From NCBI RefSeq assembly GCF_006345805.1, contig NC_043002.1, positions 84,258,001 to 84,322,000 of the forward strand: a DNA stretch of 64,000 nucleotides, in the 5' to 3' direction. A program made the position numbers and the translations under genes. The notes under the pieces were generated by a model. It was not told the origin of the DNA, did no database searches, and saw nothing but the letters and a program-made list of their open reading frames with translations. This stretch comes from Octopus sinensis. Taxonomy: Eukaryota. This document shows, piece after piece, positions 1,693 to 64,000 of this stretch (position 1 is the first letter of the stretch; each line of letters begins with the position of its first letter).

Positions 1693-2590
1693 ATCATCAT
1701 CATCGTCGTTTAACGTCCGTTCTCCATGCTAGCATGGGTTGGACGGTTCGACCGGGGTTCTGGGAAGCCAGAAGGCTGCACCAGGCTCCAGTCTAATTTG
1801 GCAATGTTTCTACAGCTGGATGCCCTTCCTAACGCCAACCACTCCGTGAGTGTAGTGGGTGCTTTTTACGTGCCACCTGCACAGGTGCCAGGCGGGGCTG
1901 GCAACGGCCACGATCAGATTGGTGTATTTTATGTGCCACCGGCACGGAAGCCAGTCGAGGCGGTGCTGGCATCGGCCACGAGTCGGATAGTGCTTTTTAC
2001 GTACCACCAGACCAGGGATCCTGGCTGGTTCAATTCGATTTCGATTTCGCTTGCCCCAACATGTCTTCACAAGCAAAGGGGGTTGGCATGGGTGCCTGTC
2101 GTACGGTCGCATTGGAGTATTTTACGTGCCACGGCCACGAGTCGGATAGTGCTTTTTACGTACCACCAGGCCAGGGATCCTGGCTGGTTCAATTCGGTTT
2201 CGATTTCGATTTCGATTTCGCTTGCCCCAACATGTCTTCGCAAGCATGGGGGGTTGGCATGGGTGTCTGTCGTCGGATGAGGTTCTATATCGACTTCGCT
2301 TGCCTCAACCGGTCTTTGTGTCCAAGGGAGGAAAGGCATTCATAAGTGGGCTGGGCTCACTTGTCCTGCCTGGTCTTCTCACGTACAGAATATTTCCAAA
2401 GGTCTCGGTCTCTGGTCATTTCCTCAGTGAGGCCTAAAGTTCGAAGGTCGTGCTTCACCACCTCGTCCCAGGTTTTCCTGGGTCTACCTCTTCCACGGGT
2501 TCCCTCAACTGCTAGGGATTGGCACTTTCTCACACACCTATCTTCATCCATTCTCGCCACATGACCATACCAGCGCAATCGTCTCTCTTG
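1693..2590 (-). mobile_element. 5'-truncated RTE-clade LINE: ORF C-terminus plus ~660-nt modular 3'UTR and (GAT)n tail
   Basis: Minus strand encodes QERRLRWYGHVARMDEDRCVRKCQSLAVEGTRGRGRPRKTWDEVVKHDLRTLGLTEEMTRDRDLWK (RTE C-terminal motifs LRWxGHVxRM and GRPRKTW); stop at 2357-2359, followed by the tandem-module 3'UTR. Confidence 0.9.
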
Positions 2591-2604
2591 ATAATATACA
2601 TATA

Positions 2605-2821
2605 TGTGTGTGTTTGTGTGTCTGTATTTGTACCCCCAGTATCGCTTGACAACTGATGCTGGTGTGTTTACGTCTCTGAAACTTAGTGGTTCAGCAAAAG
2701 AGACCAATAGAATAAGTACTAGGCTTACAAAGAATAAGTCCTGGGGTGGATTTGCTCGACTAAAGGCAATGCTCCAGCATAGCCACAGTCAAATGACTGA
2801 AACAAGTAAATAAGTAAAGAG
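2605..2821 (+). mobile_element. Octopod SINE family A, 3' half
   Basis: 'gatagaataagtactaggcttacaaagaataagtcctgggg...ccagcat.gccacagtcaaatgactgaaacaagtaaa' as in the full copies at 36486 and 51587. Confidence 0.85.
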
Positions 2822-3149: not shown

Positions 3150-5494
3150 AAGTATACAAGTATGTAATGTGTGCGTGGGTATGTCGCATGCGCGCGCGCA
3201 ATGTGGTTCAGAACTATCTTATGTCTGGTTTTGAAGATCCTGTTAAATTTCCACTTTACTGGAGTGTCCGACTTGTAGTAGTCAGCTGAGATGTTGCTAA
3301 CTTGCTCATCGATCCACATACATCTATGCTCTTCACCCCTTTGCCATGAAATAGTATCATCCATATGGTGTGATCACCCTCTCACTATCAGTCACATACA
3401 CTCATGCACTAATCTCTCTTTCTCTTTCACCGTTCTCTCTCTCTATCTCTCTGTATCTGTCTCATATTCACGTTCTTTCTGTTTCTTATAGTGCCTGTCT
3501 CTCTCTATCTGTCTCTTTCCTTCATTGCGTTTATCAGTTTTCACTCGGCACACGGTCGCTTTCGACACGCCGAGCGTTTTCTGATTCCTTGATTTACAAA
3601 CGGTGACTTGTATATTTGTACATACATGTGTATATATATATATATATATATTTCTATCATAATACCAAGAAGACAGAAAGAAAACAAGTTGGACATTCAT
3701 ACATTTTAAAGCAATCCTAACGGGAAAGAAAAAAAAAACTAACGAAACATTTAATTTTGCTCCGGAATTTGGATATATATGTACTGTATAAATATAAATA
3801 CATATATCCTTAGAGGAATTACCGATTTTCTTCATCTCTAAACCATTTGGACACTGTCTACTTTCTTTTACATTCTTGTTGTTGTAAACACTTCTGATAA
3901 TTTATGTATAATTTTGGACCTGGTATGTTTAATTAAACATATCTCAGAAATTAATACTTTTAAGAACAGAAGACAACAACAGAAATACAAGATCGCTTTA
4001 CTGTGTGATTATTATATGAAGTTTTGCTTTGGTCATAATTTTTTTGGCAGAAGATCGGATTTGTGCCGAGTTGGAGGAAGACACAACATATCAGCTTCTA
4101 CATACTTACGCTTTAAAAAAGACTTTTTGAGGAATTCATTCATTTGAAAATTTTCCTCTCACTATTTCATCGGAATTATTTACCCGTCGTTTTCTGTTTT
4201 TTAAACTTTATTTTGTTAAATTGTCAAAAGAACTAGGATTTTTCATATTGTGCGTGTGTGTTGCTGCTGTTTTGTTTCGCGACTTCTCTACAATTTAATG
4301 TATAGTTTTGATCCATCGACGAAAATAATACACGAACATATTTTTTAAGAATATTAACATTTTCTTTTCCTCACATCTCGAGCAATTTACAGACATACAC
4401 TCATCTGTGATGTTATATCATATTTTAAGATCTCTTTCACGGAAAGACCCTATCTTGTATTAATATTCAGTCAAGCAGAATATCGCTCCTTTCTGATATT
4501 TTTATTGATTATTGTTGTTATTTGTGTTTGAATAAGAAAACATTTATTTCCCTCTAAGTGGTGGACAATCCCCCGCCGGCTATCCAATAACATCATTGCC
4601 ACCCACACTATCACTGTCTGTCGTCATCATCTTCGTCTATAACAACATCTTCGTTACCGAAATACATTAGTAGTAGCAGACACAATCATTTCATTCATTC
4701 ATTCATTGCCACTTCTACTAGTAGGATTGGTTTTGGTTGGCTGCTATTACCGTTAGTAGTAATAGAACTGATACAACCAATTACTACTGTAGTAGTATTA
4801 TTCGTGTCTTTTATATTCTCCTTCCAATGAACCCGTTCACCCTGTGTCCTTGGACTCAAAATTCCAGGTGGGGTTCAATGTTATATTAACTTTTGCCGAC
4901 ATAGACCATCGCCAGTTACCTTGGATTCCGGTCATACATCAATATCTGTTCTATGCTATTTCGTTCCACCATTTTCGTTCCACTGTCTTTAGAAATCCAT
5001 TCTATTCTTGCATTTCTATTTATAGACATTTATTACCTTTAGCTCTCTCTCTCCCCCTCATTTAAAATTCTTGGTCAACAACATTTTATCCGTCGCACGA
5101 CAACCAGCTTTCTCATTTCCTCCATCATGTAAAATTTAACTTTCACATTACATTGACACTATAATTTAAAATAACTTATCCTTCCGTAACGTTAGAATTC
5201 GTTTTAACATTTGCCACTGCCATTATTTATGTACTTTAATATATTAATTTATATTCCTTATTCAATGAAATGTCATCGTAGATCATAATTTCAAAGCACC
5301 CCAAAACTAGTTTACATTAATGTCTAGATGACCTTCTCCGACACTCCATTTATACGTACATTTTTATTATTTGTCACCTTATAAAATTATATTTTTATGG
5401 CACCTTGTCGCTTTTTAGTGTTGTCTAGTAGTCGTAGTCACCATCTAATTTCGTGTCATTTGAAATGCATTCCGTCCACCTTCCTATTGATTAG
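3150..5494 (+). promoter_or_regulatory. Candidate promoter / 5'UTR region for the long-exon PISD isoform
   Basis: Free of SINE/LINE copies, with visibly more CpG than the flanking DNA; NRF1-like 'cgcatgcgc' at 3185-3193, GC box 'ccccgcc' at 4571-4577, CCAAT at 4584-4588; lies directly upstream of the 380-codon exon. Confidence 0.4.
3904..3922 (+). CDS. Possible upstream PISD micro-exon (MYNFGP + G), coding part only
   Basis: ATG at 3904 preceded by in-frame TAA; donor CTG|GTATGT at 3923 (phase 1) is frame-compatible with acceptor ttag|G at 5494/5495, giving MYNFGPGWIMLTAVL... Confidence 0.35.
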
Positions 5495-5502
5495 GTTGGA
5501 TA

Positions 5503-6642
5503 ATGTTAACTGCTGTTCTGGTGCTAGTCTGTGAATCTTGGAATCATGCTGTTTTTGTGTACACAACACTTGCCTTAGTTTTGTTAATTAGCCGCTATGG
5601 CACTGTTCTCACTCGTCTGATACTCTTTCAAACCTGGTGGAACAACAAGAATATTATCAACGCACACTCCTCCTCCGTTGGCAAAACACATTTAAAGGTA
5701 CCTGGCTCAACTTACAACAAGTGGACCACATCATCTGCTCAAACAGAATCATCAACTGAAACCTTATCCTCTGAGACTGATCAAAGAGAGGTTAAAACAG
5801 AATTAGCAAATAAATATTTATCAAATTGCTTTAAAAAGTTGGGACTAAGAAAAGAATTTTACAAGACAAAAATGTTACTGGAAAATATCCTTATTCAAGA
5901 TTCTATGCTGTTTGGCAAAATCTTTTCTAAAGATAAACCAGAACTAGATGAGCCATCTGCAGAAATGGTAGCTAATCTACCATCTATAATTATTGATCAT
6001 GACAATGATCTCTTTTTTGAACATTTATCAGCATTTACTCAAATGGTGAACAAAGAAACTGATTGGTTTCAGCATCATTCTAGTGAACCACAACTATCCT
6101 GCTCCTCTTCTTCCTCCTCCTCTTTATCATCTCAGTGGCTAGGGGCACTTAATGGTGATGACTCCTTTTATGAGAGGCTTCCAGCTTCACTACCATCTAC
6201 ACCTTTACGCCAGCGCTTGGCTAATTCCCTAGATTCAGTTGGAAACTCTGTCTTCTCTTCATCATCTTCACCCCTTACAAGCTGCAGTGAAGAGGACATT
6301 AAAATTCTACAACAGCAATATATAGCTGCTTGTCTGGAAAAAAAATTGAAAGATCTCCATAAACAGTCGAAAGAGAACTCTGAGTATCAGCTTGGAGACC
6401 GTAACAACAATGGCAGTGTTGTTAGCTCTAACAATTTCTGCACCAAACCAGAACAACCCTCAAGTGATAGTAATAACTCCTTGTGTAACCATTCCTCATG
6501 TCAGAAGCACAGGAAGTGCTGCTGTCCAAATGCCAATTATTCAACTTCACAAGAACTTCAATCACCCCATCACAATTCTCCACCAAAAAAAATGAAGATC
6601 AATAAAAAACTTAGGAACCCTTTAAAGAAAATTAACAAAACG
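5503..6642 (+). CDS. PISD: Large unique coding exon (380 codons), putative alternative first exon of PISD
   Basis: Only long non-repetitive ORF in the window. Hydrophobic N-terminus, Ser-rich middle, Cys cluster, polybasic end. Ends ACG|GTATGT (phase-0 donor) two codons before a stop, matching the phase-0 acceptor at 38422. Linkage to PISD is inferred, not shown. Confidence 0.65.
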
Positions 6643-6725
6643 GTATGTTGATTATTTTTGTAAATAATGAGAGAAAAAATTTCATTTTTAGTTATCAAAA
6701 TTTTGTCTATTCTGATTTAATTTAA

Positions 6726-18939: not shown

Positions 18940-19377
18940 AAAAAATCAAATCAAAATCGAAATCGATCAACATCAATGGAATTTGTAGTTGTGGTACCAG
19001 TGCTGGTGGCACATAAGAGAACCATCCGAACGTGGCCGTAGCCAGCACCGCATCGACTGGCCTCCGTGCTGGTTGCACGTAACAAACACCATCCGATCGT
19101 GGCCATTGCCAGCCTTGCCTGGCCTCCGTGCCAGTGGCACATAAAAGGCACCATCCGAGCATGGCCGTTTGCCAGCCTCGTCTGGCACCTGTGCTGGTGG
19201 CACGTAAAAAGCACCCACTACACTCATAGAGTGGTTGGTGTTAGGAAGGGCATCCAGCTGTAGAAACACTGCCAGATCTGACTGGCCTGGTGCAGCCTTC
19301 GGGCTTCCCAGACCCCAGTTGAACTGTCCAACCCATGCTAGCATGAAAAGTGGACGTTAAACGATGATGATGATGAT
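18940..19377 (+). mobile_element. RTE LINE 3'UTR fragment, low divergence
   Basis: Hairpin modules plus complete terminus and (GAT)n tail. Confidence 0.85.
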
Positions 19378-30767: not shown

Positions 30768-32679
30768 ATGAACATCAATGGAATTTGTATCTTTGTGGTT
30801 CCAGTACCGGTGGCACACAAGAAAACCATCCGAACGTGGCCGTAGCCAGTACCGCATCGACTGGCCTCCGTGCTGTGGGCACAACAAACACCATCTGATC
30901 GTGGCCGTTCGCCAGCCTCATCTGGCACCTGTGTCGGTGGCACATAAAAACACCATCCGAAGACCCGGCGACGTAGTCAGTCCACCTGTGCATACCTTCC
31001 CTCTTATGACACTTGTGAAGACCTGTTGAGGCAAGTGTGTGACACTTGTGAAGACCTGTTGAGGCAGAGGCAAGTGTGTGACACTTGTGAAGACCTGTTG
31101 AGGCAGAGGCAAGTGTGTGACACTTGTGGAGACCTGTTGAGGCAAGTGTGTGACACGTGTGACACTTGTGAAGACCTGTTGAGGCAAGTGAAAATCAAAA
31201 CAAATCAAAATAGATGAACATCAATGGAATTTGTATCTTTGTGGTTCCAGTACCGGTGGCACACAAGAAAACCATCCGATCGTGGCCGTTCGCCAGCCTC
31301 ATCTGGCACCTGTGTCGGTGGCACATAAAAACACCATCCGAAGACCCGGCGACGTAGTCAGTCCACCTGTGCATACCTTCCTACTTATGACACTTGTGAA
31401 GACCTGTTGAGGCAAGTGTGTGACACTTGTGTAGACCTGTTGAGGCAAGTGAAAATCAAAATCAAAATCAAAATCAAAATCAAATCAAACCAAATCAAAA
31501 TAGATGAACATCAATGGAATTTGTATCTTTGTGGTACCAGTACCGGTGGCACACAAGAAAACCATCCGAACGTGGCCGTAGCCAGTACCGCATCGACTGG
31601 CCTCTGTGATGTGGGCACATAACAAACACCATCCGATCGTGGCCGTCCGCCAGCCTCATCTGGCACCTGTGTCGGTGGCACATAAAAACACCAACCGAAG
31701 ACCCGGCAAGACTAGTCAGGCCATAACCCGTGGCCCCTACTTGGGACGTAGTCAGTCCACCTGTACATACCTTCCTTCCTTCTTGTGACACTTGTGAAGA
31801 CCTGTGAAGACCTGTTGAGGCAAGTGAAAATCAAATCAAATCAGATCAAAATAGATGAACATCAATGGAATTTGTATCTTTGTGGTACCAGTGCCGGTGG
31901 CACACAAGAAAACCATCCGAACGTGGCCGTAGCCAGTACCGCATCGACTGGCCTCCGTGCTTGGGCACGCAACAAACACCATCCGATCGTGGCCGTTCGC
32001 CAGCCTCATCTGGCACCTGTGTCGGTGGCACATAAAAACACCATCCGAAGACCCGGCAAGACTAGTCAGGCCATAACCCGTGGCCCCTACCTGGGACGTA
32101 GTCAGTCCACCTGTGCATACCTTCCTTCTTGTGACACTTGTGAAGACCAGTTGAGGCAAGTGAAAATCAAAATCAAATCAAAACAAATCAAAATAGATGA
32201 ACATCAATGGAATTTGTATCTTTGTGGTACCAGTGCCGGTGGCACACAAGAAAATCATCCGAACGTGGCCGTAGCCAGTACCGCATAGACTGGCCTCCGT
32301 GCTTTGGGGACGTAACAAACACCATCCGATCGTGGCCGTCCGCCAGCCTCATCTGGCACCTGTGTCGGTGGCACATAAAAACACCATCCGAGCGTGGCCG
32401 TCTGCCAGCCTCGTCTGGCACCTGTGTCGGTGGCACATAAAAACACCATCCGAGCGTGGCCGTTCGCCAGCCTCGTCTGGCACCTGTGTCGGTGGCACAT
32501 AAAATCACCCACTACACTCTCGGAGTGGTTGGCGTTAGGAAGGGCATCCAGCTGTAGAAACACTGCCAGATCTGACTGGCCTGGTGCAGCCTTCGGGCTC
32601 CCCAGACCCCAGTTGAACCGTCCAACCCATGCTAGCATGGAAAACGGACGCTAAATGATGATGATGATGATGATGATGA
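30768..32679 (+). repeat. Tandem array of five RTE 3'UTR-derived units ending in one RTE terminus
   Basis: 'atgaacatcaatggaatttgtatctttgtgg' recurs at 30768, 31214, 31504, 31855, 32197; only the last unit has the 3' end and (GAT)n tail. Confidence 0.9.
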
Positions 32680-37583: not shown

Positions 37584-38421
37584 ATTATTATTATTATTAT
37601 TATTATTATTCTGTTGTGCTCATATATCTTGAGGGTTCTTTCCTTGTCTTCATTCATTTGTTTTAATGTCCATTTTTCTGTGGTTCTTGTTGAAATATGT
37701 CCTTAGGCATCTGTCATGCAAATATCTAAATTAAAGTAATTGACCTGAAAGCAGCATGGATGGAGAAATGACCATAAATATATAACTCTAAAGGAGTAAA
37801 TATTCCCAAACAAGGACCTCCACTCAGCTGAGAGAGGGGAAAGGGTGTGACTTTGGAGTATTCCTTCACATTTATGCATATTAGGCAATCACCATTTGCA
37901 GCTGCATTCAGCAATTTTGCAGTCATGCTTTCACATGCACACAGCATGCAGATGTGTGCTTACATATAAATTTATAATCATAAACTTTATAACCGAATGC
38001 ATTGCTAATTACATAGATAACATTTACACATACAAATAATAATAATAATAATAATAATGGTTTCAAATTTTGTACCAAGGGCAGCAATTTTGGGGAGGGG
38101 ATGAGTCAATTACATCGAACCCCAGTGTTCAATTGGTATTTATTTTTATCGCCCCCCCCCCAAAGGATGGAAGGTAAAGTTGACCTCAGCAGAATAATAA
38201 ATGAATTCAAAGTGAGATGTGATTGATATGTATACGCACACACACACACGCATATGCACACACAAACGTGTGCTCACACAAACACACACACACACGCATA
38301 TGCACACACAAACGTGTGCTCACACAAACACACACACAAGTACATGCATTATTTGTTTTGCTTTATTTTTACTGTGAAATTCTTAAAAGTCATTGATTGC
38401 ATAACTTTCTTCACATTTTAG

Positions 38422-38658
38422 GTAACCCTTTACCGAAAAATGCCTCTTCGGTCGCTGTCTCGCTTATGGGGAAAAGTAAACCAACTAGATCTGCCTGTTT
38501 TCATGCGGATACCTGTATTTCGGATATACATTTGGGCATTTGGCTGCAACATTGAAGAAGCAGAGGAAGAGGACTTGAAAACGTATCGAAATCTTGGCGA
38601 ATTCTTCCGCAGAACTTTAAAACCTCAAGTGCGGCCAATTGATGACATACATTTATTG
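38422..38658 (+). CDS. PISD: PISD conserved exon (237 nt, phase 0-0)
   Basis: tttag|GTA...TTG|gtaagc; VTLYRKMPLRSLSRLWGKVNQLDLP...YRNLGEFFRRTLKPQVRPI matches animal PISD [21 protein letters not shown]...YRNLSEFFRRKLKP. Confidence 0.97.
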
Positions 38659-47669: not shown

Positions 47670-48161
47670 TCCGATCAATTCGATGACTGGCATCCGTGCT
47701 AGCGGGGTGCAAAGAGCAGCTATTCAAGTATGATTGTTACCAGCGTCGCCTTACTGGCACCTATGCCTGTGCTAGTAGGGTGCCAAGTGTACCATCCGAG
47801 CGTGATCGTTGCCAGAGCAGCCAACTGGCTTCCATACCCGTGGCACATAAAAGGGCACCATTCGAGCGTGAACGTTACCAACATAGCTTCACTGGCACCT
47901 GTGCCAGTGGCATGTGTAAAAAGATTCGAGCGAGGTCATTGCCAGTACTGCCTAACTGGCCCCCGTGCCAGTGGCACATAAAAAGCACCCACTACACTTT
48001 CAGAGTGGTTAGCGTTAGGAAGGGCATCCAGCTGTAGAAACTCTGCCAGATCAAGATTGGAGCCTGGTGCAGCCATCTGGTTTGCCAGCCCTCAGTCAAA
48101 ATCGTCCAACCCATTCTAGCATGGAAAGCGGACGTTAAACGATGATGATGATGATGATGAT
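47670..48161 (+). mobile_element. RTE 3'UTR fragment (variant subfamily)
   Basis: Hairpin modules, terminus and (GAT)n tail. Confidence 0.85.
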
Positions 48162-50506: not shown

Positions 50507-51058
50507 TCCTTTAACATTTAAACCGACTATATCCATCCGAACTAGAACCATCCGAACGTGGCCGTTGCCAGCGCCGCCCCGACTGGCCTTGTGCCGGTGG
50601 CATGTAAAAAGCACCATCCGTTTGTGGCCGTTGCCAGCCTCGCCTGGCCCCCGTGTCGGTGGCATGTAAAAAGCACCATCCGATTGTGGCTGTTTGCCAG
50701 CCTCGTCTGGCACGTAAAAAGCACCCACTACACTCACTGAGTAGTTGGCGTTAGGAAGGGCATCCAGCCATAGAAACATTGCCAGATCAGACTGGGCCTG
50801 GTGCAGCCTTCTGGCTTCCCAAACACCAGTTGAACCGTCCAACCCATGCTAGCATGGAAAGCAGATGCTAAACGACGATGATGATGATGATGATGATGAT
50901 CCAGCCAAATTTGGTCTCTCACACCAGCCCTACAATGACATTCAAAAAATTAAGTTGCATTATCAAATCCTCAAAGCTAGGACATAATGCATGATTAATT
51001 GAAAACAATATCAATAAATGAGCATTAAATTTGGTCGAGTAATCTGCATGTTAATGGG
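50507..51058. mobile_element. piggyBac-type MITE interrupted by an RTE fragment
   Basis: TTAA at 50503-50506 and 51059-51062; both halves homologous to the reverse of 8770-8988. Confidence 0.7.
50546..50900 (+). mobile_element. RTE 3'UTR fragment nested in a MITE
   Basis: Modules, terminus and (GAT)n tail. Confidence 0.85.
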
Positions 51059-54530: not shown

Positions 54531-54948
54531 ACAAGTCCTTCAGATGGTACTATCACACATTTCGGTCGAGTGGAGAATGGTGTTATCAAGCAAGTAAAAG
54601 GAGTGAACTTTTCTGTTGAGGGTTTCATTGGACCAGTTAGTTGGAAATCCCCATTTTCATCATCGTCATCTTCATCCTCATTATCATCATCATCCTCACA
54701 ATCATCTTCACCAGACTCTTCATCAATGTCCTCTTCCTCCTCTTTGTCATCATCATCTCTTCGAGAGGACATAAACAACAGTCATAATAATGTAAATGCC
54801 CACATTGACCAAAACCAGAAGATTCTTTCCCAGCTGATCCATCCAGATAATGTATTATATCATTGTGTTATTTACTTGGCACCCGGAGACTATCACCGCT
54901 TTCATTCCCCTACAGACTGGATAGTTTACTTCCGAAGACATTTTCCAG
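54531..54948 (+). CDS. PISD: PISD exon (418 nt, phase 0-1) with catalytic Asp and His and a Ser-rich insertion
   Basis: tttcag|ACA...CCA G|gttggt; TSPSDG (Asp codon 54543), [28 protein letters not shown] (His codon 54894), RRHFP. Confidence 0.97.
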
Positions 54949-55774: not shown

Positions 55775-55935
55775 GTGAATTACTGAGTGTACATCCTGGT
55801 ATGGCACGGTGGATCAAAGGACTATTCAACCTTAATGAGCGTGCTATGTATGTAGGACTTTGGAAACATGGATTTTTTTCGATGACCGCTGTAGGGGCTA
55901 CCAACGTCGGTTCCATCCGTATTTATAATGATCAT
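55775..55935 (+). CDS. PISD: PISD exon (161 nt, phase 1-0)
   Basis: ttccag|GT GAA...CAT|gtaagt; [22 protein letters not shown]...[21 protein letters not shown]. Confidence 0.97.
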
Positions 55936-56595: not shown

Positions 56596-56814
56596 GAACT
56601 TGCCACAAATACATGGAAAAAACCAGATGGTAATAACACTGACAAGTATTTACCAAATGAACAAAGTCCTGGAATTGAAGTTGGGAAAGGTGATCTCTTT
56701 GGTGAATTCAATTTAGGTTCCACCATTGTTCTTATTTTTGAGGCTCCTAAGGATTTTACATTCAACGTGGAGCCTGGACAGAGAATAAAATATGGTGAAG
56801 CCATTGGAACATAG
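56596..56814 (+). CDS. PISD: PISD last exon with LGST autocleavage motif
   Basis: ttacag|GAA; GEFNLGSTIVLIFEAP (Ser codon 56719-56721, the pyruvoyl precursor); TAG at 56812-56814; predicted alpha subunit 31 aa. Confidence 0.97.
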   Translation, partial: ELATNTWKKPDGNNTDKYLPNEQSPGIEVGKGDLFGEFNLGSTIVLIFEAPKDFTFNVEPGQRIKYGEAIGT

Positions 56815-61285: not shown

Positions 61286-64000
61286 TTAAAATATTTTCCC
61301 CCTTCTTTTTTAACATCAGTAATAGCAGGAAAATAATGAAGTTTAAAAAATAGTCTATCTTATCATATTAAACGAGAAAAATAGGAAATCAATCTTTTAA
61401 AATCTTTTCTTAAAGGAGCATTTTTTTTTTCTCCTTTAAGAATTGGTCTCTCTCCTTTGTGAACAAATCTCTTGGGTCATGTGACAATTGCAATCTCATT
61501 ATTAATATTGATGTGATTTCTATCATTGGAATATTTTTGTGTTTTTTTTTTTAACTTTCTCTCAGTGCAAGTAAATTTAATCTTGTTGACATAAAAATTA
61601 CACACACACATACCTGCATGCACATATACACACATACAGATACCTTTAGGTCTGCATACTTAAACTGTGTTAAACAATGGCTGTTGAGGTTTTGAAAATA
61701 AGGTTCTTTTATCAATTTGAAAACAAATATAATGAAATGTGATGTTATTCATTGAAGTGAATGCTGATATTTTACTTTGTTATTATTATTTTTTTTTTGC
61801 TTTTTGCTTATCTTGGACTGTATTAATATTTCATTGATCTTGTGATTGGTTTTGGTTTCTTTTTTCCTTTTTTTTTTTAGCCATTGTGGCTTGTGACTTG
61901 TCAACAATATTGCTAACTGTGATCAAAGAAGTTCAATCACATCATTGAAATGGGTAGTAGGAGTGTAATAATATATACGCACATATATCTATCCATATAT
62001 ATACACACAATCACAGACATAAATGTATATATATTTGAACCAAATTAATTCAAATTTGAACTACTGTCTTTCCAAATGGGAAATGGAAAATGAATAAAAA
62101 GAGATGAGTCTACTGAGGTATTTCGTTGGAATACTTTTCAGTGTCTTCACCATATAATACTCCTTCTTGGAGTAGCCATAATAGATCTAAATATTTCCTT
62201 CCCTTCAACGTGGATATTTGAGCAATGTGTAAGGTAACAATGTCTCAGAGATGATACTGTGAACTATTGGTTGTCAAGATGGAATCATCTTCATTGTCTC
62301 TGAGTTTATATTTCTGTAAACATTTTAAAAATACCTACAGAATTAGCTCTGGTGAAGTATAAATAAATAAATAAAACTTGTTTCCAGACATGACTTTTTT
62401 TTTTGTTATTTCATATGACTGATAAATATTTTATTCGCATCATCTTTTTTACGAAAGGATTAAAAAAGAAAGGTTTTGTGGAGTTAACTTTATTTAATCT
62501 TATTTGAACACTGAAATATCAATGTCCAGAATTTTGCTTCTATGTTATCATTTCCACTACAAGACATGAAGCTGTTGTTGCTTGTTTTACTGATCACATC
62601 CATATTCCCAATTCTGGTTGCCTCCTTAGAGATTTACAGTGTAATAGTTACTTTAACTTTTACACTATCTCTCACTCTCTCATACATACACACACATATC
62701 ATATCATGAGTTCATCAAATCTACATAGAACATTGTTATTCTCTTGATCAATATTGTTACTCATTGTGTTGTGCTAAAGTATGTAACTGCCATTATCACT
62801 TCAGTGTAATGCTTGGCATATATAAAAGCAGTTTATAATCCAGCAATTGCTGAAATAATGTGAATTTGTATAAGCATACAAACTACATTAGCAGATACCA
62901 TTGATTAAAGTGGAGTGTGAAGGGATTGTAAAAGCATTAAAAAGAAAATTTCAGATTGGTAAAGAAAATATTTGTTTCTATGCTTGCTTTGCTGGTTTTC
63001 ACAGGAAACCCAAGTCAGTGATATTTTTTTGTTTTCTAGGCAGGTTTGTTAACAGCTGGAGAGAAAACGCACATTACCTTTCTATCTAGAGAGATAAATG
63101 GAGTTGTGATGAAAATAAAGATTAAAAACATAGCTCTTAAACCACAAACTCTTTGGGATTAAGATATCAATAGTTATATCCAAGCTTGTTGATGACTTTA
63201 GTGGCTTATGTTCTCTGGAACTACTCCCACTGTAATCTGTGCATATATATATATATATATATATAAATTTTTTCCAAATGTTTATTGCACAGTTGTATGG
63301 ATCTAATATGGAAAAAAAACCTTCACTCACAGCTTCATCAGCTAAATGTTATGTGAATGTTGGCAAATTAATTTTTAAAAATATCAATGTATTTTCATCC
63401 CATCCATTCATTCATAAGCATGCATATGCGCACAGTAAACTATAAGCTTATTTTGTAATATTTTGTGTGTGTGTGTGTGTGTGTGTTTTATTGTTTAAAT
63501 TGTGAGCATTGTAGAGTAAAATACGTGAAGTTCAAATGCTAGTGATTCCCGGTTGCTTCAATTTCAATTCTCACATCCTCTACCCCACAAAGAACAATGG
63601 GCTCATAACCCTCTGATTACTAAACATCAGGCTAATGAATCTATTTATCACCTTCATTAAATAAATGAAGTATTTGACTGAGACATTGGCAACACAAGCA
63701 ACAGCTCCTTTTGGATGTCTTTCATATATATATATTATTAAAATCTTATGTATTGATTAAGTCTTTCCTTGTTTGTTTTGCAAAATAGTGGTTTTGTCTC
63801 TAATAATATTTTATATATATATATATATATATAATGTTTGCAAATAAAATTTACATGTGTATGTTTAATAAGTATACAATCAGCCTTGCTGTTTATTAAA
63901 CATCTGCTTGTTAATATATTTACAAAATTTATCATTAGGCAAAGCTGTCTCTACTTTACCTAAACATAGGTATATGTATTTGTGTGTGTATGTAGTGAAG

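What the first reader, a model, noticed from the sequence alone, without database searches (positions are those of the whole stretch)
5503..6642. A 380-aa alternative N-terminus for PISD, suggesting a non-mitochondrial membrane-anchored PS decarboxylase
Seen: the only long unique ORF ends at a phase-0 GTATGT donor, and the next coding exon, 31.8 kb downstream, is the phase-0 PISD exon beginning VTLYRK. The ORF starts with about 45 hydrophobic residues and lacks an Arg-rich, acid-free presequence. Known: this junction is where vertebrate PISD swaps its mitochondrial exons for a short alternative first exon, an isoform reported at lipid droplets; yeast Psd1 also has an extra-mitochondrial pool. 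Inferred: octopus may encode a ~724-733 aa PSD whose N-terminal extension is several times longer than the vertebrate alternative exon, possibly making PE at the ER, lipid droplets or another membrane.
Basis: partly seen in the sequence, partly recalled or inferred. Interest (0 to 1): 0.75.

Follow-up and report, generated by a model that had tools for sequence, protein, structure and literature searches.

The report
Alternative first exon of octopus PISD
The 380-codon open reading frame is a real alternative first coding exon of the octopus phosphatidylserine decarboxylase gene, replacing the mitochondrial targeting exon with a hydrophobic anchor and a long floppy linker; public databases already hold this 724-residue protein as an unstudied gene model.

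Summary
ORF 5503-6642 is the only long ORF in the window (chance expectation about 7e-7). It ends in phase 0 at a GTATGT donor. The next PISD exon, 38422-38658, starts VTLYRK at the position where human PISD-M and PISD-LD diverge.

The ORF joined to the four PISD exons gives 724 aa, letter for letter XP_029637590.1 (Octopus sinensis "uncharacterized protein LOC115212912 isoform X1"). O. vulgaris has the same model (724 aa) and O. bimaculoides a 728-aa one.

The exon is under purifying selection: dN/dS is 0.23 against another octopus. Its start codon and donor sit at the same positions in a distant, unidentified relative, probably a cephalopod.

What I add: it looks like the enlarged cephalopod version of an alternative PISD N-terminus found in gastropods and bivalves. 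These share an N-terminal hydrophobic LY(S/T)TL motif and an exon end (L/I/V/F)N(K/S)T before VTLYRK. In a bivalve this N-terminus and the enzyme lie in one ORF on an mRNA-like contig. It shows no detectable similarity to the vertebrate PISD-LD exon.

Localisation is inferred only. I saw no octopus junction reads.

The parts
5503..6642 (+). Alternative first coding exon of PISD (380 codons), N-terminus of isoform X1
   Evidence: ORF. Joined to the PISD exons it is identical to XP_029637590.1. dN/dS is 0.23 against L001. Homologous ORFs are P0001, P0002 and P0131.
5503..5679 (+). Hydrophobic N-terminal region, aa 1-59: three predicted helices (2-14, 16-32, 35-59); putative membrane anchor or hairpin
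   Evidence: Hydropathy. AlphaFold2 helices at pLDDT about 60-67. Conserved in P0002. Scores 12.1 bits against the mollusc LYSTL-motif HMM, exceeded by 0 of 2000 shuffles.
5869..5922 (+). Conserved island, aa 123-140: KMLLENILIQDSMLFGKI
   Evidence: Nearly invariant between octopus and the distant relative P0002. By eye it resembles the (L/I)IIQGL(K/R)WGIP island of other molluscs; this was not tested statistically.
5977..6003 (+). Conserved island, aa 159-167: LPSIIIDHD
   Evidence: Conserved apart from one residue (H166; S in P0002) across the four sequences of alignment A1. Function unknown.
6289..6390 (+). Predicted long helix, aa 263-296, inside an otherwise disordered linker
   Evidence: AlphaFold2 pLDDT 68-78; the rest of aa 54-387 is mostly below 50.
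6577..6642 (+). Basic tail SPPKKMKINKKLRNPLKKINKT ending at the splice junction
   Evidence: RNPLKKINKT is invariant in P0001, P0002 and P0131. The ending INKT fits (L/I/V/F)N(K/S)T, found in 12 of 13 other mollusc alternative N-termini. Chance of such an ending is about 2e-4.
6643..6648 (+). 5' splice donor GTATGT, phase 0
   Evidence: The donor sits at the same position in L001 (GTATGT) and L003 (GTAAGT).
38422..38658 (+). First common PISD exon (VTLYRK...IHLL, 79 codons), preceded by acceptor AG at 38420-38421
   Evidence: Identical in isoforms X1 and X2.
54531..54948 (+). PISD exon (TSPSDG...RRHFPG) with an octopod Ser-rich insertion
   Evidence: The insertion has pLDDT below 50 at aa 503-544.
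55775..55935 (+). PISD exon ([12 protein letters not shown]...IRIYNDH)
56596..56814 (+). Last PISD exon, with the LGST self-cleavage motif and the stop codon
   Evidence: PF02666 scores 177 bits on the 724-aa protein.

Best explanation
Window 5503-6642 is an alternative first coding exon of the Octopus sinensis PISD gene (LOC115212912). Its GTATGT donor at 6643 is spliced across a 31.8-kb intron to the first common exon at 38422. The product is the 724-aa isoform X1. The canonical 423-aa isoform X2 instead uses a 79-aa mitochondrial presequence and anchor exon that lies outside the window.

Shown: the exon, its reading frame and its donor are conserved under purifying selection. The joined protein equals existing gene models in three Octopus species. 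The catalytic part is a complete type I PS decarboxylase proenzyme. The exon carries the N-terminal and junction motifs of an alternative PISD N-terminus present in gastropods and bivalves.

Inferred: isoform X1 lacks a matrix-targeting presequence. It is held in a membrane by its hydrophobic N-terminus (aa 1-59). Basic residues follow the hydrophobic stretch, so the rest of the protein should face the cytosol. A linker of about 300 residues, mostly disordered and enlarged in cephalopods, tethers the catalytic domain, which would make phosphatidylethanolamine from phosphatidylserine outside the inner mitochondrial membrane.

My estimates for the site: ER or lipid droplets about 0.5, outer mitochondrial membrane about 0.3, elsewhere about 0.2.
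For: - The exact 724-aa sequence is in public databases as XP_029637590.1. O. vulgaris CAI9724067.1 (724 aa, one substitution) and O. bimaculoides XP_014786901.1 (728 aa) carry the same junction.
- Against another octopus, dN/dS is 0.23 (38 synonymous and 34 non-synonymous differences; Fisher p = 2e-9). All indels are in frame. Coding identity is 91.6%, against about 84% in the gap-rich flanks.
- The donor follows ...NPLKKINKT in L001, L003 and P0131, and similarity ends right after it.
- The junction is the isoform switch point in Haliotis, Tubulanus, Pomacea, skate and human (PMC7938800).
- N-terminal motif test: 12.1 bits, 0 of 2000 shuffles as high; for P0002, 3 of 2000. An exon ending that fits (L/I/V/F)N(K/S)T has a chance of about 2e-4.
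- In a bivalve the homologous N-terminus and the PSD domain form one ORF on a 1985-nt Logan contig, which looks like mRNA.
- Hydropathy and charge. AlphaFold2 gives three N-terminal helices, a low-confidence linker and a confident PSD fold. PF02666 scores 177 bits.
- The O. vulgaris annotation added alternative forms from Iso-Seq and RNA-seq with PASA (PMC10700109).
Against: - I saw no octopus RNA read or cDNA across 6642->38422. All three proteins are computed gene models, and the O. vulgaris pipeline also used O. bimaculoides proteins as evidence.
- The two protein searches listed no further protein joining this exon to a PSD domain; the octopus models themselves were not listed and turned up only by exact look-up.
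- Whole-exon similarity to other mollusc N-termini is not significant: 80-112 of 1000 shuffles score as high, and hhalign gives probability 11.6%.
- Hydrophobicity is only moderate and the region is interrupted by polar residues, so topology is uncertain.
- In human cells the unique PISD-LD segment alone, and the common segment alone, each target GFP to mitochondria (PMC7938800). Losing the presequence therefore does not prove a non-mitochondrial location.
Confidence: 0.78

Rival explanations
1. Gene-model artefact. The ORF is the coding 5' exon of a separate gene, or a nested gene in the first PISD intron. Prediction software joined it to PISD only because the phases and splice signals fit.
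For: No transcript evidence was seen here. XP_ and CAI records are predictions. RefSeq names the O. sinensis and O. bimaculoides models 'uncharacterized protein'. The searches listed no further protein joining this exon to a PSD domain.
Against: The exon ends at a conserved phase-0 donor, so it needs a downstream partner. I found no other coding exon between 6643 and 38421: there is no long ORF and no PISD-like match. Its last residues and its N-terminal motif match the alternative N-termini that are joined to VTLYRK in other molluscs, once on an mRNA-like contig. Annotations of three species carry the same junction, though they are not fully independent.
Confidence: 0.07
2. The isoform is real but still mitochondrial. 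The moderately hydrophobic N-terminus with a basic C-terminal flank acts as a signal anchor for the outer mitochondrial membrane, or internal signals in the common region bring the enzyme to mitochondria. It would then be a second mitochondrial form rather than an ER or lipid-droplet enzyme.
For: Kyte-Doolittle hydropathy is only about 1.6-1.7, and R31, R38 and K49 follow the hydrophobic stretch. This pattern is typical of outer-membrane signal anchors (my own knowledge). Human PISD-LD 1-73 and 74-375 each go to mitochondria (PMC7938800). The common helix VTLYRKMPLRSLSRLWGK is conserved and has a hydrophobic moment like the human one, 0.39 against 0.37.
Against: There is no Arg-rich, acid-free presequence. 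Keeping a separate 380-codon exon under selection suggests a different destination or regulation from isoform X2. The same features also fit an ER anchor with a cytosolic C-terminus, or a monolayer hairpin.
Confidence: 0.3
3. The exon is transcribed and spliced, but the long isoform is a minor or regulatory by-product: low abundance, unstable, or not translated. It would then make no distinct contribution to PE synthesis.
For: No expression data were available. Most of the extension is low-complexity and predicted disordered. RefSeq calls the protein 'uncharacterized'.
Against: The open frame is kept over 380-413 codons in octopods and in a relative with only 33-35% identity. dN/dS is 0.23. 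Short islands are invariant. This argues that the protein itself is under selection.
Confidence: 0.08

Closest known systems
RefSeq and ENA gene models XP_029637590.1 (O. sinensis), CAI9724067.1 (O. vulgaris), XP_014786901.1 (O. bimaculoides)
   Same: They are the same protein. The 724-aa sequence built from the window is identical to XP_029637590.1.
   Different: Nothing differs in sequence. The records carry no functional note: RefSeq calls two of them 'uncharacterized protein', and UniProt labels them 'mitochondrial'. I found no paper on an octopus PS decarboxylase.
Vertebrate PISD-LD (human NM_014338; PMC7938800)
   Same: It is an alternative first coding exon that replaces the mitochondrial presequence exon at the same phase-0 junction, before V-x-L-Y-(K/R). 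The unique part has no predicted presequence and contains a hydrophobic segment. The common helix just after the junction is conserved.
   Different: The unique exon shows no detectable similarity (hhalign E = 0.41 and 0.69). The vertebrate unique segment is 73 aa in human (75-128 aa in the fish aligned here), with a Pro-rich hydrophobic segment 10-25 residues before the junction. The octopus exon is 380 aa, with the hydrophobic part at the extreme N-terminus and about 300 mostly disordered residues plus a basic tail before the junction. Lipid-droplet targeting is untested.
Alternative PISD N-termini of other molluscs (for example Haliotis asinina X2, Mytilus galloprovincialis X1, Patella caerulea, Lymnaea stagnalis, Arion vulgaris, and several bivalve transcripts)
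   Same: They use the same junction. The exon ends (L/I/V/F)N(K/S)T. They have an N-terminal hydrophobic LY(S/T)T(L/I)...(K/R)(G)YG-type motif and a basic C-terminal part.
   Different: These N-termini are 104-146 aa, against 380-413 aa in cephalopods. Whole-length profile similarity is not significant. As far as I could find, none has been studied.
Yeast Psd1 ER pool, and type II PS decarboxylases (yeast Psd2, plant PSD2 and PSD3)
   Same: They make PE by PS decarboxylation outside the mitochondrial inner membrane. Type II enzymes also have long N-terminal extensions (PMC7938800; PMC8886813, abstract; my own knowledge).
   Different: Yeast Psd1 reaches two organelles from one polypeptide, not through an alternative exon. 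Type II enzymes are separate genes with C2 or other domains. The octopus extension has no Pfam domain, and its catalytic part is a type I animal PISD.

Membership tests
Type I phosphatidylserine decarboxylase proenzyme (PISD, Pfam PF02666) | PS_Dcarbxylase domain | tested here: met
   PF02666 scores 177 bits, E = 4.7e-52, on the 724-aa protein. The best homologues are animal PISD.
Type I phosphatidylserine decarboxylase proenzyme (PISD, Pfam PF02666) | LGST self-cleavage site and the conserved DYHRFHSP and SPSDG catalytic motifs | tested here: met
   FNLGSTIV lies in exon 56596-56814. GDYHRFHSP and TSPSDG lie in exon 54531-54948. The role of these motifs is from my own knowledge.
Type I phosphatidylserine decarboxylase proenzyme (PISD, Pfam PF02666) | Exon 5503-6642 is part of the same mRNA as the PSD exons | not testable with these tools
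   No reads or octopus cDNA were available. Gene models in three species carry the junction. The homologous bivalve N-terminus lies in one ORF with PSD on an mRNA-like contig.
Vertebrate PISD-LD isoform | Alternative first coding exon swapped in at the junction before V-x-LY(K/R) | tested here: met
   Human residue 108 aligns to 38422. The first 107 aa of PISD-M and the first 73 aa of PISD-LD are unique (PMC7938800). Skate X1 and X3 diverge at the same point.
Vertebrate PISD-LD isoform | Sequence similarity of the unique exon (...FPQLALRRRLGQLSCMS...WPLSFLYFFLPF...GWRPTSR) | tested here: not met
   hhalign of the vertebrate LD exons gives E = 0.41 against the mollusc exons and E = 0.69 against the cephalopod exons.
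Vertebrate PISD-LD isoform | Pro-rich hydrophobic segment just upstream of the junction, followed by an amphipathic helix across it | tested here: inconclusive
   The 31 residues before the octopus junction are basic and polar (8 K, 1 R) and hold no hydrophobic segment. The helix after the junction is conserved, with a similar hydrophobic moment (0.39 against 0.37).
Vertebrate PISD-LD isoform | Localisation to lipid droplets | not testable with these tools
   This needs cell biology.
Mollusc alternative PISD N-terminus (unnamed; isoforms in RefSeq, GenBank and UniProt records) | Exon ends (L/I/V/F)N(K/S)T directly before VTLYRK | tested here: met
   The octopus exon ends INKT. Twelve of 13 other molluscs fit the pattern. 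The chance of such an ending is about 2e-4.
Mollusc alternative PISD N-terminus (unnamed; isoforms in RefSeq, GenBank and UniProt records) | N-terminal hydrophobic LY(S/T)T(L/I) motif followed by basic residues | tested here: met
   The motif HMM scores 12.1 bits on octopus aa 1-50, and 0 of 2000 composition-preserving shuffles score as high. For P0002 it scores 6.6 bits, with 3 of 2000 as high.
Mollusc alternative PISD N-terminus (unnamed; isoforms in RefSeq, GenBank and UniProt records) | Significant similarity over the whole exon | tested here: inconclusive
   The whole-exon HMM scores 1.0 bit, with 80-112 of 1000 shuffles as high. hhalign gives P = 0.0026 and probability 11.6%, for the N-terminal segment only.
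Type II PS decarboxylase (Psd2-like) | C2 or other lipid-binding domain in the N-terminal extension; separate gene | tested here: not met
   No Pfam family matches the 380-aa extension even at E up to 10. The extension is an exon of the single type I PISD gene.

The most novel reading that the evidence does not exclude
Molluscs, and perhaps Lophotrochozoa more widely, may have their own membrane-anchored extramitochondrial PISD isoform, unrelated in sequence to vertebrate PISD-LD. It would have evolved at the same ancient phase-0 intron. In cephalopods its linker has grown to about 300 disordered residues. The anchored enzyme could then reach across a membrane contact site and make PE on a neighbouring membrane. 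This would revise the published view that a second PISD form 'first appeared in fishes' (PMC7938800).
Probability: 0.25. Interest if true: 0.6.

Novelty: new variant of a known kind. Interest (0 to 1): 0.4.

Why it matters
PISD is usually treated as an enzyme of the inner mitochondrial membrane. The one well-studied exception in animals, PISD-LD, was reported to have first appeared in fishes (PMC7938800).

This locus shows that octopuses keep, under selection, a different alternative N-terminus at the same splice junction. Related N-termini occur in gastropods and bivalves. Other kinds of alternative N-terminus at this junction occur in a nemertean and in hemichordates.

So swapping the targeting exon of PISD looks like an old and repeated way to place PE synthesis on different membranes. 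This can be tested by localising the octopus or mussel N-termini in cultured cells or yeast.

For the scan itself the result is modest.

Tried and rejected
- Pfam on the 380-aa ORF: no family, even at E up to 10.
- Mitochondrial exon (MMSLRY...SNLK): tblastn found no copy in the window. It must lie upstream. The annotated gene spans 105.8 kb, and only about 51 kb of coding span is in the window.
- Fetching the whole O. sinensis locus failed because the gene range is too long. O. vulgaris P0003 is not on record. So I could not place the mitochondrial exon or any 5' UTR exon.
- Word-indexed search with the ORF: only P0001 and P0002. Profile search of 1.84 billion representatives: only P0002 and P0131. 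Neither search lists the octopus X1 cluster itself; I found it only by exact-sequence look-up.
- Whole-exon HMM of 13 non-cephalopod N-termini against the octopus exon: not better than block shuffles. hhalign was weak. Only the motif-level and junction-anchored tests were significant.
- Similarity to the vertebrate PISD-LD exon: rejected.
- A possible FFAT-like motif in DHDNDLFFEHLS: considered by eye. I dropped it because the core positions do not fit and the P0002 sequence differs.
- A cleaved signal peptide (MLTAVLVLVCES|W): considered and not favoured, because a second hydrophobic helix follows at once and the two-part pattern is conserved in P0002.
- Literature: no paper on an octopus PS decarboxylase.
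- Searches were technical failures: hmmsearch does not accept --max together with --nobias.

Full report
**1. The observation**

ATG is at 5503, and 380 codons run to 6642. GTATGT follows at 6643-6648, and TGA at 6649-6651. An in-frame TGA lies at 5488-5490, so the frame cannot open further upstream.

It is the only long ORF in the window. The next longest, 184 aa, belongs to a dispersed repeat. Given the window's composition, about 7e-7 ORFs of this length are expected by chance.

The next PISD exon starts at 38422, after TTTTAG. It reads VTLYRKMPLRSLSRLWGK and ends at 38658. The remaining PISD exons are 54531-54948, 55775-55935 and 56596-56814, the last ending in the stop codon.

According to PMC7938800 the first 107 residues are unique to PISD-M and the first 73 to PISD-LD. 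So the octopus exon boundary is the vertebrate isoform switch point.

**2. What it is**

I joined the ORF to the four PISD exons and looked up the resulting 724-aa sequence by exact match. It is in the public collection as XP_029637590.1, [quoted passage not shown].
- O. vulgaris CAI9724067.1 is also 724 aa and differs by R38H.
- O. bimaculoides XP_014786901.1 is 728 aa.
- The window is therefore O. sinensis (GCA_006345805.1).

The canonical isoform X2 (XP_029637591/2, 423 aa) starts with MMSLRYLVAKTY...PSNLK. This 79-aa stretch holds 12 basic residues and one acidic residue, and it joins the same VTLYRK exon. That exon is not in the window. The annotated gene spans 105.8 kb, so it probably lies upstream of the window.

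The homology searches did not list this cluster. This is why the isoform first looked absent from the databases.

**3. Conservation**

Against another octopus (Logan contigs L001 and L002; protein 88% identical, 91% over aligned residues):
- dS is 0.17, dN is 0.039 and dN/dS is 0.23. There are 38 synonymous and 34 non-synonymous differences (Fisher p = 2e-9).
- Indels in the exon are all in frame.
- Nucleotide identity is 91.6% in the exon, against about 84% in the gap-rich flanks.

A much more distant relative (P0002 on L003, 33-35% identity; species not identified, probably a cephalopod) keeps several features:
- the start codon;
- the hydrophobic N-terminus;
- the islands KML(L/V)ENILIQ(D/E)SMLFGKI and LPSIIID;
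- the tail RNPLKKINKT, followed directly by a GTAAGT donor, after which similarity stops.

A second distant ORF, P0131, ends in the same way. So the frame and the donor are old and under selection.

**4. Link to other molluscs**

The PISD search returned many lophotrochozoan isoforms. Thirteen gastropod and bivalve proteins share an alternative N-terminus of 104-146 aa. It has a hydrophobic LY(S/T)T(L/I) motif near the N-terminus, a basic C-terminal part, and an end of (L/I/V/F)N(K/S)T directly before VTLYRK. Twelve of the 13 fit that ending.

The octopus exon reads VYTTLALVLLISRYG near its start and ends KKINKT. The tests gave mixed results:
- The whole-exon HMM is not significant.
- hhalign finds only the N-terminal segment (P = 0.0026, probability 11.6%).
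- A 42-column HMM of the N-terminal motif scores 12.1 bits on octopus aa 1-50. None of 2000 composition-preserving shuffles scores as high. For P0002 the figure is 3 of 2000.
- The junction-anchored four-residue ending has a chance of about 2e-4.

In one bivalve, this N-terminus and the PSD domain form a single 438-aa ORF on a 1985-nt Logan contig, which looks like spliced mRNA.

I conclude, with moderate confidence, that the octopus exon is the enlarged cephalopod version of a mollusc-wide alternative PISD N-terminus.

It has no detectable similarity to the vertebrate PISD-LD exon.

**5. How it probably works**

The catalytic part is complete. PF02666 scores 177 bits, and the [12 protein letters not shown] and SPSDG motifs are present.

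The extension has no Pfam domain. AlphaFold2 on a 30-sequence alignment gives:
- helices at 2-14, 16-32 and 35-59 (pLDDT about 60-67);
- a linker mostly below pLDDT 50;
- one helix at 263-296 (pLDDT about 70-78);
- a confident PSD fold.

Hydropathy is moderate (Kyte-Doolittle 1.6-1.7). R31, R38 and K49 follow the hydrophobic stretch.

My model is inferred, not shown. The N-terminus anchors the protein in a membrane, either as a signal anchor with a cytosolic C-terminus or as a hairpin. The catalytic domain sits on a flexible tether of about 300 residues and makes PE away from the inner mitochondrial membrane.

ER or lipid droplets are my first guess (about 0.5). An outer mitochondrial membrane anchor is a serious rival (about 0.3). 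Moderate hydrophobicity with a basic flank suits that membrane, and both halves of human PISD-LD can target mitochondria (PMC7938800).

**6. What is missing**

I saw no octopus read or cDNA across the junction.
- The three proteins are computed models.
- The O. vulgaris pipeline used O. bimaculoides proteins as one line of evidence.
- That pipeline did add alternative forms with PASA from Iso-Seq and RNA-seq (PMC10700109).
- I could not fetch the upstream part of the gene.

**7. Verdict**

The isoform is already in RefSeq, so its existence is not new.

Two points appear not to have been described. First, it belongs to a mollusc-wide alternative PISD N-terminus. Second, that N-terminus is unrelated to the vertebrate LD exon, although PMC7938800 states that a second PISD form first appeared in fishes. 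I found no paper on an octopus PS decarboxylase.

I rate it a new variant of a known kind, with moderate interest (0.4).

Noticed in passing
window 56701/56702 (internal donor G|GTGAAT) and 61881-61946 (+): This is an alternative terminal exon, AIVACDLSTILLTVIKEVQSHH*, preceded by a long T-run and AG. O. vulgaris isoform CAI9724065.1 (P0003, 408 aa) uses it through a donor inside the last PISD exon. That splice removes the LGST self-cleavage motif, so the product should be catalytically dead.
   Followed up: partly
window 54650-54760 (+), inside exon 54531-54948: A Ser-rich low-complexity insertion ([34 protein letters not shown]) sits in the PSD beta-subunit. It is shared with O. bimaculoides and Argonauta hians and absent from other molluscs. 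AlphaFold2 pLDDT is below 50 at aa 503-544.
   Followed up: partly
window 1701-2020 (+), with copies at about 19069-19369 (-), 32359-32663 (-), 47956-48147 (-), 50596-50880 (-): A dispersed repeat of about 300 nt, 82-85% identical between copies, with an internal duplication at 1973-2276. It accounts for the MLAWVGRF... ORFs in the ORF list. It is probably a SINE-like or transposon-derived element in the PISD introns.
   Followed up: partly
window 2357-2707 (-): This ORF reads ...ERRLRWYGHVARMDEDRCVRK...GRGRPRKTWDEVVKHDL.... From memory it looks like the C-terminal tail of a LINE-type retrotransposon ORF2 common in invertebrates. It was not tested.
   Followed up: no
proteins P0012/P0017 (Tubulanus), P0007-P0010 and P0021 (caenogastropods), P0042 and P0099 (hemichordates), P0024 and P0039 (JGI): Other, mutually unrelated alternative N-termini join PISD at the same junction. 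A nemertean form has an N-terminal transmembrane-like stretch and ends ...RFNKK. A short Cys- and Arg-rich form occurs in caenogastropods. Hemichordates have a hydrophobic, Pro-containing form just before the junction. N-terminal swapping at this intron looks widespread in animals, beyond the vertebrate case described in PMC7938800.
   Followed up: partly
window 5480-5494 (+): A pyrimidine-rich stretch and AG (CTTCCTATTGATTAG|G) end 8 nt before the ATG. L003 has TTAATTCAG|ATAATG, ending 3 nt before its ATG. The start codon may therefore lie just inside an internal exon, with a 5' UTR exon further upstream, possibly outside the window.
   Followed up: no
protein P0131 (640 aa; profile match at residues 410-618): The second distant relative matches only the C-terminal half of the exon. 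Upstream, its ORF is low-complexity Leu/Pro/Ser sequence. That may be a frameshifted or repeat-disrupted assembly, or the exon may be split in that species.
   Followed up: no
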